64,000 bases of DNA, from positions 62,001 to 126,000 of IMG/VR virus record IMGVR_UViG_3300041411_000129; one strand, 5' to 3'. The translations under genes were made by a program, and so were the position numbers. Under the pieces are notes generated by a model that was not told the origin of the DNA, did not search any database, and saw only the letters and a program-made list of their open reading frames with translations. The stretch's first letter is position 1. Each line of letters opens with the position of its first letter. Below are positions 58,649-62,326 of the stretch, piece by piece.

Positions 58649-58688
58649 GGCATACAGAGCGGGGCAGTGCCCCGCTCTGTTTTATGCT
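58649..58688. terminator. bidirectional terminator
   Basis: GGCATACAGAGCGGGGC-AGT-GCCCCGCTCTGTTTATGC. Confidence 0.8.
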
Positions 58689-59767
58689 GCTGGCAGTCTT
58701 TCCACAACCATCCTTACAAGGCGCTCAGACAAGTAACCCGAGGCAGCCCCAGTAAGGCCATTGTCAAATGTCTTCTCTTCCTTGATCTGGATGAGAGTGC
58801 GTCTGAGGATAGTTGTTTCCTTGAGGATGCGGTCGTAACCACTCTTCTCAGCAAACGCCAGCATTACAGCTACAGCATCCATCTTCTGCGCCATCAGTGC
58901 CCACTCTACCTGATAGGTAGGAGTCATGGATGGGAGACAAACGGTGTCGAGATAGTTGCTGCCGAAGATAGCTGGAATAGAAGCCATCATCTGCCCACCA
59001 GTCATGGCTTTAGCCGAGACTTTACTGTAGACATCAACAACAATAGCTTGAGCTGGGTCATTCACAGAGGTTTGACCGAATGGCAGGTTGGTCTTGACAT
59101 CGCAGCTTTCACGAATACCCAAGTGAACCATCAACTTATTGAACAGAGCCACGTTAAGGTGACTCTTAATCAGGTTGAGCAGAACAACCTGGGTCAGGAA
59201 GGCTTCGATCAACTTACCCGGATTAGCCGCCTGCCACATCTTCCATTGAGCAGCCAACAGAGGGATGTCGATATTGATGACCGCTAAGTCTGGCTTCTCG
59301 ATATCGATGGAGTTCATCACACCGAGTTCGACCATCGTCATATCGCTGATCGGGTGGTTGACTACGGTGACCGGCTCAAGGTCATGCCATCCACGCCAAA
59401 GGTCCATGATCGTGTACGACTCATCGCGAGAATACATAATGATCTCAGGGCAGCCCGGATAGAAGACGCCTTCTGTGAATAGGGTCCCTTTGCTGAAGCT
59501 GGCCGCAATGCCCAGTCCAGAACACATCCGTCTGGCCGCTATCTCGCAGTCAGCCATGTACTTGACCAGATCCCCTGTGAACTCGACATTGAGGTTCAGA
59601 AGGATCTTAGCTAATAGATGAGAGCTGTCGACACGACCTGGATAACTACCGCGTTCGGTTACGTACTTCTTGTAGTTCTCGCTAACCCTCCCACGCAGAT
59701 AGTCCATCCGGGGGAATTGGAAAGGCGAATTCTCAAACCGGGTTGTCCGATTAAGTAACTGATACAT
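58682..59767 (-). CDS. conserved chimallivirus protein (phiKZ gp52-like)
   Basis: 361 aa, divergent from chimallin in the conserved position. Confidence 0.65.
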   Translation of the reverse strand: MYQLLNRTTRFENSPFQFPRMDYLRGRVSENYKKYVTERGSYPGRVDSSHLLAKILLNLNVEFTGDLVKYMADCEIAARRMCSGLGIAASFSKGTLFTEGVFYPGCPEIIMYSRDESYTIMDLWRGWHDLEPVTVVNHPISDMTMVELGVMNSIDIEKPDLAVINIDIPLLAAQWKMWQAANPGKLIEAFLTQVVLLNLIKSHLNVALFNKLMVHLGIRESCDVKTNLPFGQTSVNDPAQAIVVDVYSKVSAKAMTGGQMMASIPAIFGSNYLDTVCLPSMTPTYQVEWALMAQKMDAVAVMLAFAEKSGYDRILKETTILRRTLIQIKEEKTFDNGLTGAASGYLSERLVRMVVERLPAA

Positions 59768-59923
59768 TTTAATGTCCCGGATAGATGGTTGCGTAAAAAG
59801 TTACACATGTTCACTATTATATAGTAGATCCCTCGAAGACATTCGTAACCCGAATGTCTCGACAGCGTCTGCTACCCCAGTACGCTGTTTAGAGTCATTT
59901 CATTTGGACCGCGACCAACAAAT

Positions 59924-60002
59924 TTCTGGTGATACATTATCATCGTGCATATAGAAACACGCTGATGGAAATGAATCTAAAAACATTACAGGTATACATT
60001 AC
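59924..60002 (+). promoter_or_regulatory. tandem putative early promoters for chimallin
   Basis: TTCTGGTGATACATTAT (59924-59940) and TTACAGGTATACATTAC (59986-60002). Confidence 0.6.
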
Positions 60003-60243
60003 CGTAGTGAATATAACCAGTGGATAAGGAAAGTCGAAGTGATCTAAGTAAAAAGTCACACAGCAACAGAATCTTAAGACCCGTAGCGTAAAGCCGGTTT
60101 AGTGCAACCGGTTCAAGCCCGTGCTATTCACGACGGTGGGTATTGCCGGGAATCCCTGATAGCGATAAGGGTAATAGTACCGTAATTGCCAGTTAGGCAC
60201 CATCGCAATAAATGTGTACACAAAATCTTTAGGAGTAGCACCA

Positions 60244-62262
60244 GTGAGCAAAGAAAACGGTAACGACGGCTTCGAAATGAAAGATGACGCCCCAGCCCCA
60301 CGCGCCGAAGCTCCAGCATCTGAGCGCCGTGAAGAACGTCGCGAAGAGCCACGTCGTGAAGAACGCAATACCCGCCGCGATCGCGATGAGCGTGAAGAAG
60401 GCGAAGAACGTGCGTTCACGATTGCGGACATCGGCCGTACCCTGAACGTCCGTCCATCCAGCGGTGGCCTGAGCGATGCTGCTCTGTCCGCACTCATGGC
60501 TGCGTTCGAGAAGAACAAGGCGTTCGACAAACCGAACCTGCCTGATGCAATCAAGCGCGACCGCTTCAAAGTGATTCCGCTGGACGGCTCCCTGGCCAAG
60601 TCCTCGCTGAACTCGCTGCTGGTAACTCTGCCAATCGTCATCGGCGCTGGCAAGGCAACTCTGGTTTACGTTCTGACCATCGAACCGGCCGGTGGCCACG
60701 GTACTCGCAGTCAGGTCGATCGCGGCACCACTTACGATGCGATCGTTCTGCCTGAAGACCAACTGGCTACCAAGCCGTACAAACGCGCCATCGAAGATCA
60801 GGTCTCCGGCCTGAACAAAGATGCCAAGGTTGTGGTGATCGGTTCGCAGGTTCTGCTGTCGTCGGTTGTAGCGAAGCTGAACAAAGAAGAAAACAGCGCC
60901 GTCGTCGATCGTATCTTCGACAACGCCCTGGATGCACTGTGCGGCTACCGCGAAAACCTGGTCGACAAGGCCGGTGGTTCCCGCAACAGCGCCTTCCGCA
61001 TCAGCCCGAAAATGATCGGCCGCACTGGCCGTCTGGAAACCACCTGGAACTACAGCGGTCAACCGGGCGAAGATAGCTCGGGTCAGCCGATCCGTTCCGA
61101 CTGCACCGGTAACCTGTTCTACAGCGAAGCCAGCAACGAAGACGATAACCAGTACGACCGTACCCCAATGGGCGAAATCCGTGCAGGTATCGACCTCTTC
61201 CTGGCCGACAACCGTGAACAGTCCAGCGGTCCATCCTTCTCGCGTCGCCGCAAGTCGCAAGAAGAAGGCGAACCGTTCATCCAGGCCGTTCTGAACATCA
61301 CCTCGATCGCTCCAGCGCCGAACTTCCCGTTCTCTCTGGAACTGGCACTGCTGCTGTTGGCTCAGGCCAACCTGCAATCGAACGACTACCGCTGGGCTTC
61401 CCAGCTGCGTCCTCGCACTGCAATCAGCAACCCAGACGGCACCGGCGTGATGAAGCCTACCAGCAACATCAACTGCCTGCACCTGCTGAACCCGAACCGC
61501 GACTTTGCCAAGATCTTCGACGACGTGTCTCCGAACATGGACGACAACGATCTGAGCGATTACCTCGCGTTCACGGTCTTCCCGAAACTGGCCATCGGCA
61601 TGATGATCCCAAGCTCGGGCGAGAAGTCCTCGGTTCTGTCGATCTTCGAAAGCATCGCGACCACTCGCGATACCGACGTTGCTCGTCGCCACACCAAGAC
61701 GCTGTTCGAAGCTGCCGACGTTCTGTCGGGCAACCGCTTCAGCCGCGCCTACAAGGACCTGGCTGGTTCCACCGACGTAGCTCCAGTGCGTTCGATGGGT
61801 ACTCGTCAGCTGATCGGCACCTGGGTTGATAACCAAGGCAACGTGCGCGACCTGCGCGAATGGAACGTTCAGTCTCTCCTCACCGAAGTTGGCGAGAAGA
61901 ACATCGATCTGGTTACTGACTTCCAGTACACCTACGAGAACGATCGCAACACCGTGGACTTCTGCCTGGCAGAACGTCTGGGCTACCTCCAGAAGGTTGT
62001 TCCGGGCATCCGCGTTACCACCACCGCTCCGCTGCTGGGCTTCGAGCCCGACTTCCTCGAGGCGCTGTCGCGCTCCCTGGACGCAGCTGACATGTCGAGC
62101 TACATGACTGCCGAAGGTGGTCTGAACACTCGTCGTCACGTTGGTGGTAGCAACTGGTCGCAGCTGGCAACTTCCGACATCGGCATCAGCCGTCGTCGTG
62201 GTTCCGACCGCACCACCGCTGATCGTGGCCGTGGTGGTCTGTTCGACACCATCGACTACTAA
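60244..62262 (+). CDS. chmA: chimallin, major phage nuclear shell protein (phiKZ gp54-like)
   Basis: About 670 aa with strong codon optimisation; GQPIRSD motif; lies between the gp52-like gene and the nvRNAP beta-prime gene; GTG start after AGGAG. Confidence 0.88.
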   Translation: MSKENGNDGFEMKDDAPAPRAEAPASERREERREEPRREERNTRRDRDEREEGEERAFTIADIGRTLNVRPSSGGLSDAALSALMAAFEKNKAFDKPNLPDAIKRDRFKVIPLDGSLAKSSLNSLLVTLPIVIGAGKATLVYVLTIEPAGGHGTRSQVDRGTTYDAIVLPEDQLATKPYKRAIEDQVSGLNKDAKVVVIGSQVLLSSVVAKLNKEENSAVVDRIFDNALDALCGYRENLVDKAGGSRNSAFRISPKMIGRTGRLETTWNYSGQPGEDSSGQPIRSDCTGNLFYSEASNEDDNQYDRTPMGEIRAGIDLFLADNREQSSGPSFSRRRKSQEEGEPFIQAVLNITSIAPAPNFPFSLELALLLLAQANLQSNDYRWASQLRPRTAISNPDGTGVMKPTSNINCLHLLNPNRDFAKIFDDVSPNMDDNDLSDYLAFTVFPKLAIGMMIPSSGEKSSVLSIFESIATTRDTDVARRHTKTLFEAADVLSGNRFSRAYKDLAGSTDVAPVRSMGTRQLIGTWVDNQGNVRDLREWNVQSLLTEVGEKNIDLVTDFQYTYENDRNTVDFCLAERLGYLQKVVPGIRVTTTAPLLGFEPDFLEALSRSLDAADMSSYMTAEGGLNTRRHVGGSNWSQLATSDIGISRRRGSDRTTADRGRGGLFDTIDY

Positions 62263-62285
62263 GTCGGCAGATGCGGTAAACTGAC

Positions 62286-62326
62286 ACAGGAGGAGGGGCA
62301 ACCCTCCTCCTGTTTCTTTTTTCTTT
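62286..62326 (+). terminator. intrinsic terminator
   Basis: ACAGGAGGAGGG-GCAA-CCCTCCTCCTGT plus a T run. Confidence 0.9.

What the first reader, a model, noticed from the sequence alone, without database searches (positions are those of the whole stretch)
59768..60243. Highly structured 476-bp non-coding region and long leader ahead of chimallin
Seen: the longest intergenic stretch in the window. Stems include AGACATTCG/CGAATGTCT (59837-59859), ACAGCGT/ACGCTGT (59862-59888) and a long-range 13-of-14 pairing TTTAGAGTCATTTC/GAAATGAATCTAAA (59888-59981) that encloses one promoter motif. After the second promoter there is a leader of about 230 nt with GCCGGTT/AACCGGT, TATTGCC/GGTAATA and TGCC/GGCA stems before a GTG start. 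Inference: an ncRNA and/or a cis-regulatory leader (autoregulation, mRNA localisation or export at the shell) for the major nucleus protein.
Basis: partly seen in the sequence, partly recalled or inferred. Interest (0 to 1): 0.65.

Follow-up and report, generated by a model that had tools for sequence, protein, structure and literature searches.

The report
Pseudoknotted RNA leader before chimallin gene
The long gap in front of this uncultivated jumbo phage's nucleus-shell (chimallin) gene holds several phage promoters and, just before the ribosome-binding site, a conserved and apparently undescribed folded RNA domain that probably tunes how the shell protein is made.

Summary
The 476-bp gap (59768-60243) is real. 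It lies between a leftward virion-protein-like gene and rightward chmA in a 254-kb soil/rhizosphere jumbo phage.

Hairpin 59837-59859, GCCGGTT/AACCGGT and TGCC/GGCA are kept with compensatory changes. ACAGCGT/ACGCTGT and the 13-of-14 long-range pairing are not.

The main result is a ~115-nt RNA domain (60093-60206) in the chmA 5' UTR. It has four nested stems (H1, P2, P2a, P3), an optional stem and two loop-to-downstream pseudoknots. It occurs in 21 distinct relatives whose ChmA is 40-99% identical. In them 93% of cells pair, against 30-45% in slid controls, and 18 of 29 pairs change on both sides. G-U versus A-C counts (42 vs 3) place it on the chmA-sense strand.

There is one copy per phage genome, always before chmA. 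It matches no Rfam family, is absent from the bacterial genomes scanned, and is absent from phiKZ, LucasX and MJ359.

Upstream lie two early-type promoter motifs, two middle-type motifs laid out as in phiKZ gp54, and a mini-uORF.

No conserved anti-SD pairing was found. I favour a cis-acting translational operator bound by a protein. A riboswitch, a stabiliser and a ribozyme remain open.

The parts
59793..59824 (+). Distal middle-type promoter-like element: A-rich tract ending in TTAC (59793-59804), 15 nt, then TATAG (59820-59824; TATG in most relatives)
   Evidence: Kept in all relatives with 14-16-nt spacing. The same layout (A-rich + TACT, about 15 nt, ATATGTAG, hairpin) lies upstream of chmA in phiKZ and MJ359. 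phiKZ gp54 has a secondary TSS with the middle-promoter motif, TACT near -22 preceded by an A repeat (PMC8244752). TSS not mapped here.
59833..59862 (+). Hairpin 1 (core stem 59837-59845 / 59851-59859, loop TAACC)
   Evidence: Perfect 9-bp stem (I6). Compensatory variants in relatives: ATTCG/CGAAT, ACTCG/CGAGT, ATGCA/TGCAT, ACGCA/TGCGT, CCTGCG/CGCAGG. Every relative has a hairpin at this place. Strand not settled by energies; the phiKZ-like layout puts it at the 5' end of a rightward transcript.
59862..59888 (+).
   Evidence: Present (I3) but kept only in the closest relatives. No covariation, and absent in distant relatives. Not counted as functional.
59932..59941 (+). Early-type promoter motif P1 (ATACATTATC); expected start near 59947
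   Evidence: Direct repeat of P2 (D1). Motif kept in relatives while the 15-30 nt after it are hypervariable. ACATTACC lies in 7 intergenic sites 38-266 nt upstream of same-strand genes, and TACATTA is found 8 times upstream of genes against 1.2 expected. Jumbo-phage early promoters are ~10-nt AT-rich motifs centred near -10 (PMC7598289).
59976..60003 (+). Early-type promoter P2: upstream A-tract TCTAAAAA (59976-59983) and ATACATTACC (59994-60003); expected start near 60009
Evidence: As for P1. A CTAA(A) tract 15-20 nt upstream recurs at the other genomic copies.
60026..60047 (+). SD-like AAGGAAAG plus mini-uORF GTG-ATC-TAA (60039-60047)
   Evidence: In 8 long-leader relatives tabulated by script, an AAGGA(A/G) or GAGG box lies about 7 nt before a GTG/TTG and a 2-6-codon ORF (L022 and L023 read by eye only). 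Synonymous-type changes occur in the close clade: TTG ATC TAG, TTG ATT TAG. Absent from short-leader relatives. Translation not shown.
60048..60078 (+). Proximal copy of the middle-type element (GTAAAAAGTCAC, 15 nt, TAAG)
   Evidence: 93% identical over 15 nt to 59793-59807 (D2). Long-leader relatives have GTAAAAGTTAAC, about 14 nt, then TAATGA at the same place. Short-leader relatives have the early-type motif there instead.
60093..60112 (+). H1 hairpin of the conserved RNA domain; its loop GTGC (60102-60105) forms pseudoknot PK1
   Evidence: 5 pairs, 4 with changes on both sides, 93% of cells paired in 21 sequences. Coordinates checked.
60118..60150 (+). P2 (60118-60121 / 60147-60150) enclosing hairpin P2a (60126-60131 / 60136-60141) with invariant loop GACG (60132-60135); invariant GGAA follows
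   Evidence: P2: 4 of 5 pairs change on both sides (CCCGT/ACGGG, CCTGT/ACAGG, TCCG/CGGA, CCCAG/CTGGG). P2a: 3 of 6 pairs change on both sides, 95% paired.
60154..60171 (+). P3 hairpin (60154-60157 / 60168-60171) with conserved loop GA.GCGATA; GCGA (60162-60165) forms pseudoknot PK2
   Evidence: All 5 pairs change on both sides: CCCT/AGGG, CTCT/AGAG, TCCT/AGGA, CTTC/GAAG, CCTC/GAGG.
60177..60180 (+). PK1 3' strand GTAC, pairs with the H1 loop
   Evidence: Not part of the covariance model, yet 100% paired in 21 sequences. Double changes in L015 (ATAC with GTAT) and in L019 and L172 (GCAC with GTGC); G-U in the window.
60187..60199 (+). P4, optional hairpin (TGCC/GGCA)
   Evidence: Present in about two thirds of relatives in three forms (GCC/GGC, GGAC/GTCC, TGGGA/TCCCA) and absent in the rest. 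Read by eye, not counted formally.
60203..60206 (+). PK2 3' strand TCGC, pairs with GCGA of the P3 loop
   Evidence: Invariant in 20 of 21 sequences. L022 has GCGT with ACGC, one compensatory event read by eye. Weaker support than PK1.
60213..60222 (.). Perfect spacer-less palindrome TGTGTACACA, 8 nt before the SD
   Evidence: All 18 relatives examined have a perfect palindrome here (arms 5-7, spacer 0-1) in at least 8 different sequences. Similar palindromes precede chmA in phiKZ, LucasX, G001 and, shorter, MJ359. Not a general 5' UTR feature in this genome. RNA hairpin or DNA/protein site: undecided.
60231..60246 (+). SD AGGAG (60231-60235) and GTG start of chmA (60244)
   Evidence: Aligned with the AGGAG/ATG of relatives. 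Protein matches Pfam Chimallin_Phikzvirus (6e-10) and phrog_4795 nuclear shell protein (1.4e-34).

Best explanation
The gap is the control region and 5' UTR of chmA.

Transcription (inferred from motifs). Rightward transcription starts at up to four places:
- a distal middle-type promoter followed by a 5' hairpin;
- two tandem early-type promoters;
- a proximal middle-type element.
This mirrors the early-plus-middle promoter arrangement reported for phiKZ gp54.

The RNA domain (shown). Every such transcript would carry a conserved ~115-nt RNA domain (60093-60206) that ends 38 nt before the start codon. It consists of hairpin H1, stem P2 enclosing hairpin P2a with an invariant GACG loop, and hairpin P3. 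These are tied together by two pseudoknots: H1 loop with GTAC, and P3 loop GCGA with TCGC.

Shown here: the domain exists; it is under selection for pairing; it is read on the chmA-sense strand; it is single-copy; and it is strictly linked to chmA.

Mechanism (inferred). The domain acts in cis and after transcription. In these phages transcription is physically separated from ribosomes, so ribosome-coupled attenuation is unlikely.

The mechanism I commit to is a translational operator. A protein recognises the folded domain and its invariant loops. From that site, at the upstream edge of the 30S landing zone, it blocks or traps initiation on the A/U-rich stretch that holds the ribosome-binding site. 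The candidates are unassembled ChmA itself, whose N-terminus is Arg/Asp/Glu-rich in all carriers, or another phage RNA-binding protein. This would couple shell-protein synthesis to need.

My odds: domain real, above 0.9. Cis post-transcriptional role, about 0.75. Protein operator specifically, about 0.35.
For: Structure:
- RNAalifold finds H1, P2, P2a and P3.
- On 21 distinct sequences, 93.1% of cells pair against 30-45% with partners slid by 1-3 columns. 18 of 29 pairs change on both sides against 3-8 in slid controls. No shuffle of 500 reaches the observed values.
- PK1 was not in the model, yet is 100% paired with two kinds of double change.

Strand: 42 G-U cells against 3 A-C cells.

Linkage:
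- One strong hit per genome in the window's own genome and in five relatives' records, always just upstream of chmA.
- All 12 fetched relatives share the synteny and a 335-486-nt gap.
- The domain persists down to 40% ChmA identity.

Promoters: motifs conserved while flanks vary; genome-wide enrichment upstream of genes; phiKZ precedent (PMC8244752; PMC7598289; phiKZ sequence).

Not a simple SD-sequestering switch: no conserved or significant pairing between the domain and the SD region.

Geometry: the domain ends at -38 and is followed by 37 nt that are 68% A/U.

RD/RE-rich ChmA N-termini in all 14 carriers examined.
Against: - No transcript ends were mapped. All promoters are inferred from motifs.
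- No binding partner is known, and ChmA is not known to bind RNA.
- The fold's complexity and its invariant junction and loop nucleotides would fit a small-molecule aptamer or a ribozyme equally well.
- The single-sequence folding energy of the leader is no better than shuffles (z 0.05).
- PK2 rests on invariance plus one compensatory event.
- The relatives are phylogenetically related, so the shuffle control overstates significance. The slid control does not have this weakness.
Confidence: 0.55

Rival explanations
1. Small-molecule (or ion/second-messenger) riboswitch. The pseudoknotted domain is an aptamer that senses a host metabolite or signal and gates translation or decay of chmA mRNA.
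For: Compact multi-pseudoknot fold with invariant unpaired nucleotides (GACG loop, GGAA junction, GA.GCGATA loop). 5' UTR position. An optional variable stem (P4), as in many aptamers.
Against: No conserved alternative pairing with the SD and no terminator. Found only before chmA of one phage clade: none among 56 pattern matches in bacterial genomes, and none among the non-phage metagenome matches. No Rfam family matches. No metabolic logic links a ligand to a shell protein.
Confidence: 0.18
2. Factor-independent RNA element: a stable 5' domain that protects chmA mRNA from 5'-end-dependent decay and/or serves as a ribosome standby or enhancer platform, so the first essential protein is made fast and in bulk.
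For: The SD is not sequestered in any conserved way. The domain lies 25-45 nt from the proximal predicted start in all relatives. chmA must be expressed immediately and strongly (PMC12908238, abstract listed).
Against: Simple 5' hairpins suffice for stabilisation. Invariant loop and junction nucleotides and two pseudoknots suggest specific recognition instead. phiKZ, LucasX and MJ359 manage without the domain.
Confidence: 0.17
3. Self-cleaving ribozyme or RNase processing signal that trims the heterogeneous leaders from several promoters to one defined 5' end.
For: Interleaved double-pseudoknot topology and a small set of invariant nucleotides, as in several small ribozymes. Several upstream starts would give heterogeneous leaders.
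Against: No match to hammerhead, twister, pistol, hatchet, HDV-like or any other Rfam model in nine sequences at permissive thresholds. Topology differs from HDV (H1 is a local hairpin). Single copy per genome.
Confidence: 0.06
4. Free-standing or 5'-UTR-derived small RNA acting in trans.
For: 5'-UTR-derived sRNAs made by premature termination are reported in the jumbo phage 201phi2-1, one of them conserved among giant phages (PMC11512511). One 156-nt contig of a wastewater cDNA-type library covers only 60087-60231.
Against: No terminator-like site on the + strand between the domain and the SD. The contig's library is flagged as probably DNA, and short contigs over the most conserved segment are expected from mixed strains. 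No second-site complementarity was sought or found.
Confidence: 0.04

Closest known systems
phiKZ gp54 (chmA) upstream region: early primary TSS plus middle-promoter secondary TSS (Wicke et al. 2021, PMC8244752)
   Same: Long non-coding stretch before chmA (311 nt in phiKZ). A-rich + TAC(T) element about 15 nt before ATATG, followed by hairpins. Then an AT-rich early motif, and palindromes before the SD. The neighbourhood also matches: head/virion protein gene on the other strand, and an RNAP beta-like gene downstream.
   Different: phiKZ has no match to the covariance model anywhere in its genome. Its leader from the early motif is only about 70 nt.
T4 gene 32 mRNA operator (5' pseudoknot plus unstructured A/U-rich tract; autogenous translational repression). 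From my own knowledge, not tested here.
   Same: A phage gene for an abundant self-assembling protein. A pseudoknotted element tens of nucleotides upstream of the start (here ending at -38), followed by an A/U-rich stretch that carries the ribosome-binding site.
   Different: The gene 32 element is one small H-type pseudoknot, and gp32 is a known single-strand binder. Here there is a ~115-nt multi-helix domain, ChmA has no known RNA binding, and no sequence similarity was sought or shown.
Bacterial ribosomal-protein leaders with pseudoknots (S15; the S4/alpha-operon nested pseudoknot; 30S entrapment). From my own knowledge.
   Same: Complex pseudoknotted 5' UTR just upstream of the RBS, without obligatory SD sequestration. 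Feedback by an assembling structural protein.
   Different: Those leaders mimic an rRNA site. No such mimicry is known or tested here. No Rfam leader family matches.
Pseudoknotted riboswitch aptamers in general
   Same: Covarying stems, invariant junction and loop nucleotides, an optional stem, 5' UTR location.
   Different: No expression platform found. No occurrence in bacteria. Tied to one phage gene family.
Conserved 5'-UTR structured RNA upstream of the tail gene gp182 (phiKZ) / gp277 (201phi2-1) (PMC11512511)
   Same: A conserved structured 5' UTR element tied to one structural gene across giant phages.
   Different: Different gene. That element is described as a prematurely terminated sRNA. 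No relation in sequence was tested.

Membership tests
Any Rfam 15 family (riboswitches, ribozymes, leaders, sRNAs) | Covariance-model match at or near the gathering score | tested here: not met
   No hit in the gap at E up to 10 in the window, and none in the leaders of eight relatives at E up to 5.
tRNA / tmRNA / tRNA-like element | Cloverleaf detected by ARAGORN | tested here: not met
   0 genes in the whole window.
Riboswitch | Conserved aptamer with covarying stems and invariant core | tested here: met
Riboswitch | Expression platform: conserved alternative pairing with the SD, or an intrinsic terminator | tested here: not met
   SD partners inconsistent, duplex z between -0.85 and 1.9. 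No + strand terminator-like site.
Riboswitch | Specific ligand binding | not testable with these tools
   Needs in-line probing or ITC.
Autogenous translational operator (T4 gene 32 / r-protein type) | Structured element just upstream of an accessible RBS of the regulator's own gene | tested here: met
   The domain ends at -38. The following 37 nt are 68% A/U. The SD is not sequestered in any conserved way.
Autogenous translational operator (T4 gene 32 / r-protein type) | The encoded (or another) protein binds the leader and represses translation | not testable with these tools
   Only circumstantial: RD/RE-rich N-terminus of ChmA in all carriers.
phiKZ-type early promoter (virion RNAP) | ~10-nt AT-rich motif near -10, repeated upstream of early genes | tested here: inconclusive
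   The motif is repeated and enriched upstream of same-strand genes, but only about 7 exact copies exist. No TSS or timing data.
phiKZ-type middle/late promoter (non-virion RNAP) | A-rich + TAC(T) near -22 and T(-3)ATG(+1) at the start | tested here: inconclusive
   The layout is met in relatives and in phiKZ and MJ359. The window's clade reads TATAG, not TATG. The element is unique in the MJ359 record and in this genome, so it is not a repeated consensus.
Intrinsic terminator / attenuator | GC-rich hairpin followed by a U run on the transcribed strand | tested here: not met
   None on the + strand in 59600-60400.
Small self-cleaving ribozymes | Site-specific self-cleavage | not testable with these tools
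   Only the absence of Rfam matches is known.

The most novel reading that the evidence does not exclude
The domain is a ligand-sensing or catalytic RNA: a phage-borne riboswitch or ribozyme. It would make synthesis of the nucleus shell conditional on a host metabolite, starvation signal or immune second messenger. That would be the first RNA sensor known to control assembly of the phage nucleus.
Probability: 0.2. Interest if true: 0.9.

Novelty: new variant of a known kind. Interest (0 to 1): 0.66.

Why it matters
Chimallin is the first and indispensable product of nucleus-forming phages. How its amount and timing are set is not known beyond its promoters. A dedicated, conserved, multi-pseudoknot RNA in its leader points to post-transcriptional control of nucleus assembly, and it gives a concrete object to test by probing, binding assays and reporter fusions. 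It also adds an undescribed RNA fold, strictly linked to one gene family, that can serve as a marker for a soil/rhizosphere clade of uncultivated chimalliviruses. The comparison further shows that the layout before chmA is shared from phiKZ to this clade: a middle-type promoter with a 5' hairpin, then early promoter(s), then a palindrome before the SD.

Tried and rejected
- DNA search of the phage collection with 59000-61500 found nothing. The protein search found only 23-35% identical chimallins.
- tRNA-like reading of GGTTCAAGCC: no tRNA.
- Rfam: nothing in the window or in eight relatives.
- The first viral-contig DNA pattern gave only the five contigs already known.
- The broad pattern gave 71 metagenome and 56 bacterial-genome matches. 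Only the chmA-linked ones pass the covariance model. L063/L070 (19.9 bits) lie in GC-rich coding sequence and were discarded.
- Model hits in MJ359 at 59270 and 142405 (17.9 and 11.7 bits) are not near chmA and were taken as chance.
- Deciding the strand of hairpin 1 by folding energies was inconclusive. The MAFFT alignment of that hairpin is not structure-aware, so I did not count it formally.
- A conserved upstream CCC (about 60080) was tested by eye as an alternative partner of P2, P2a or P3. It does not covary with any of them.
- Anti-SD search: the 9-bp 60121-60129 with 60233-60241 pairing exists only in the closest relatives and is no better than shuffles.
- The 60-aa ORF 59772-59954 is broken by single-base indels in L004, so it is not coding.
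- RNA evidence: only two runs of RNA type held small parts. Both are contigs, not reads, so they give no starts or ends.
- Supplementary TSS tables of the two phiKZ transcriptome papers are not held.
- One script call returned nothing and was rerun.

Full report
**Setting.** The window is bases 62001-126000 of a 253,921-bp IMG/VR virus record with direct terminal repeats. Near-identical DNA occurs in rhizosphere, root and soil metagenomes. The gap 59768-60243 lies between a minus-strand 361-aa gene (58682-59767) and a plus-strand gene starting at GTG 60244. The minus-strand gene matches phrog_3938, and its homologues in Klebsiella phage MJ359 and phiKZ are annotated as virion/head protein. The plus-strand product matches Pfam Chimallin_Phikzvirus and phrog_4795 'nuclear shell protein'. 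The gene order is DNA polymerase, small genes, the 360-aa gene on the other strand, a gap, chmA, then a ~496-aa gene that is RNAP beta-like by synteny with phiKZ, LucasX and MJ359. This order is shared by all 12 fetched relatives and by phiKZ, LucasX and MJ359. All of them have a long non-coding stretch before chmA, 284-486 nt.

**Checking the observation.** The whole gap folds moderately better than dinucleotide shuffles (z -2.83). The opposite strand does so almost equally (z -2.46), and the leader alone does not (z 0.05). Thermodynamics therefore does not decide the matter, and I turned to relatives.

**Relatives.** Protein-guided searches gave five close contigs (ChmA 81-100% identical). 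They also gave proteins of 42-86% identity, whose contigs I fetched, and later 40-48% relatives. In the close set the gap is 87-92% identical. The exceptions are two short segments directly after the two repeated ATACATTAYC motifs, which are unrelated even between strains with 99% identical ChmA. Hairpin 59837-59859 shows clean compensatory changes in the close set. The stem ACAGCGT/ACGCTGT and the long-range pairing do not.

**The conserved RNA domain.** Across all relatives the last ~150 nt before the start codon share a pattern that sequence identity alone does not explain. Identity is only 46-58% between the window and distant relatives, below that of the coding sequence. RNAalifold predicts four helices. 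I then built a covariance model from 16 sequences and realigned the members.

On 21 distinct sequences:
- 93.1% of cells form standard pairs, against 30-45% when the 3' partners are slid by 1-3 columns.
- 18 of 29 pairs show changes on both sides, against 3-8 in slid controls.
- The covariation score is 0.361, against at most 0.093 in slid controls.
- No shuffle of 500 reaches the observed values for four of the five measures (59 of 500 reach it for further pair types).

In window coordinates:
- H1: 60094-60098 with 60107-60111, up to 7 bp.
- P2: 60118-60121 with 60147-60150.
- P2a: 60126-60131 with 60136-60141, capped by an invariant GACG loop.
- An invariant GGAA.
- P3: 60154-60157 with 60168-60171, with the conserved loop GA.GCGATA.

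Two pseudoknots were not in the model and so are not favoured by the alignment.
- PK1: the H1 loop GTGC (60102-60105) pairs with GTAC (60177-60180). It is 100% paired, with double changes in L015 (ATAC with GTAT) and in L019 and L172 (GCAC with GTGC).
- PK2: GCGA of the P3 loop (60162-60165) pairs with TCGC (60203-60206). It is invariant except in L022, where GCGT faces ACGC.

Two further elements were read by eye.
- An optional hairpin P4 (60187-60199) occurs in three covarying forms and is absent from a third of members.

G-U pairs outnumber A-C mismatches 42 to 3, so the structure is read on the chmA-sense strand.

**Distribution.**
- The model hits once in the window's genome and once in each of five relatives' records, always just before chmA.
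- It finds nothing credible in phiKZ, LucasX, MJ359 or a 29%-identity viral genome.
- A degenerate pattern of the invariant core matched 71 metagenome and 56 bacterial-genome stretches. Only the chmA-linked ones pass the model.
- Rfam has no match in nine sequences at permissive thresholds, and ARAGORN finds no tRNA.
- Four full-text searches turned up no description of a structured chmA leader.

**Promoters and the rest of the gap (inferred from motifs; no transcript ends available).**
- The 10-nt AT-rich motif ATACATTAYC occurs twice (59932-59941, 59994-60003) and is kept in all relatives. It is preceded by a CTAAA-type tract. Its 8-mer core lies in seven intergenic sites 38-266 nt upstream of same-strand genes. 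This fits the description of jumbo-phage early promoters (PMC7598289).
- An A-rich tract ending in TTAC, followed after 14-16 nt by TATG (TATAG in the window's clade) and then hairpin 1, is kept in every relative. It recurs upstream of chmA in MJ359 and phiKZ. It matches the phiKZ middle-promoter description, and phiKZ gp54 is reported to have an early primary and a middle secondary start (PMC8244752).
- A second copy of this element lies at 60048-60078, immediately before the RNA domain (D2). In short-gap relatives an early-type motif takes that place.
- Between the second early motif and this element, long-leader relatives carry an SD-like box and a 2-6-codon uORF.
- I could not identify the promoter of the leftward gene.

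**Mechanism.** The domain ends 38 nt before the start codon. It is followed by an A/U-rich stretch holding a perfect palindrome (60213-60222) and the SD. I looked for a conserved anti-SD or terminator and found none. This argues against a classical SD-sequestering or terminating riboswitch. Transcription in these phages is separated from ribosomes (PMC12908238, abstract), so ribosome-coupled attenuation is unlikely too.

That leaves three possibilities:
- recognition of the folded domain by a trans-acting factor that acts on initiation;
- stabilisation or enhancement without a factor;
- catalysis.

I favour a protein-bound translational operator, by analogy with phage and ribosomal-protein feedback systems. 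I note that all carriers have an Arg/Asp/Glu-rich ChmA N-terminus. This step is inference, and I give it about 0.35.

**RNA data.** Only two RNA-type runs held small parts of the stretch, both as contigs. One soil metatranscriptome contig lies inside chmA of a relative. One 156-nt contig from a wastewater cDNA-type library, flagged as probably DNA, covers exactly 60087-60231. I do not count either as evidence for a discrete RNA.

**Verdict.** What is there is a multi-promoter region, homologous in layout to that of phiKZ gp54. It also holds a new, well-supported, pseudoknotted 5' UTR domain specific to chmA of one uncultivated chimallivirus clade. Its function remains to be tested.

Noticed in passing
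window 60213-60222; L165 (phiKZ) 2590-2625; L007 1825-1855; L104 1685-1700; L105 1700-1710: A perfect spacer-less palindrome lies just upstream of the chmA SD in all 18 carriers examined, with at least 8 different sequences. Similar palindromes lie before chmA in phiKZ (two 14-mers), G001 (a 12-mer and a 16-mer), LucasX (a 14-mer) and MJ359 (an 8-mer). Arms are Watson-Crick only and the centre is always self-complementary. That looks more like duplex-DNA symmetry or an RNA dimer site than a plain hairpin. It is not enriched in other 5' UTRs of this genome.
   Followed up: partly
window 59942-59972 and 60004-60016: The 15-30 nt directly downstream of each early-type promoter motif are unrelated between strains whose ChmA is 99% identical (window vs L002), while the flanks are nearly identical. 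These are local replacement hot-spots at the predicted transcript starts. Unexplained.
   Followed up: no
window 60026-60047: SD-like AAGGAAAG followed by the mini-ORF GTG-ATC-TAA. Eight long-leader relatives tabulated by script keep an SD-like box plus a 2-6-codon uORF that ends at or inside the proximal A-rich/TTAAC element.
   Followed up: partly
window 60244-60420 (ChmA residues ~17-56): ChmA begins with a 35-60-residue Arg/Asp/Glu-rich low-complexity tail in every phage that carries the RNA domain. LucasX lacks it, and MJ359 has a weaker version.
   Followed up: partly
L014 7393-7764: Group I intron (RF00028, 81 bits) beside an HNH_3 ORF, downstream of the gene that follows chmA in a 58%-identity relative. 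L013 also has the HNH ORF. The window's copy of that neighbourhood has no such insertion.
   Followed up: no
window 60001-60013 with 60125-60137; 60121-60129 with 60233-60241: Two window-specific complementarities. One is a 12-of-13 match between the start of the P2 transcript and the P2a hairpin. The other is a 9-bp match between the P2/P2a 5' side and the SD region. Both would compete with the conserved fold. The first is absent in L002 and L003. The second is kept only in the closest relatives and scores no better than shuffles.
   Followed up: yes
window 60229-62301, minus strand: A 690-aa open frame runs antisense to the whole of chmA and is longer than chmA's own ORF call. Codon-usage scoring picks chmA, so the antisense frame is a mirror ORF and not a gene.
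   Followed up: partly
whole genome G000: The 7-mers TTATGCC and TATGCCC are 4-7-fold enriched in the 150 nt upstream of genes. This fits a phiKZ-like late promoter core, T(-3)ATG(+1).
   Followed up: no
window 60087-60231: A single 156-nt contig (depth 5.5) from a wastewater 'RNA-Seq cDNA' library covers just the RNA domain and nothing else of the 1.6-kb stretch laid. It could be a stable RNA fragment, or merely the most conserved segment shared by mixed strains.
   Followed up: partly
window 59868-59878; relatives at the same place: A conserved box, TCTATAAT(G/C)C in most relatives, follows hairpin 1. It is degenerate (TCTGCTACCCC) in the window, and a similar box follows the hairpins in MJ359 and phiKZ. 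Function unknown. It resembles a -10 box, but no -35 partner is present.
   Followed up: no
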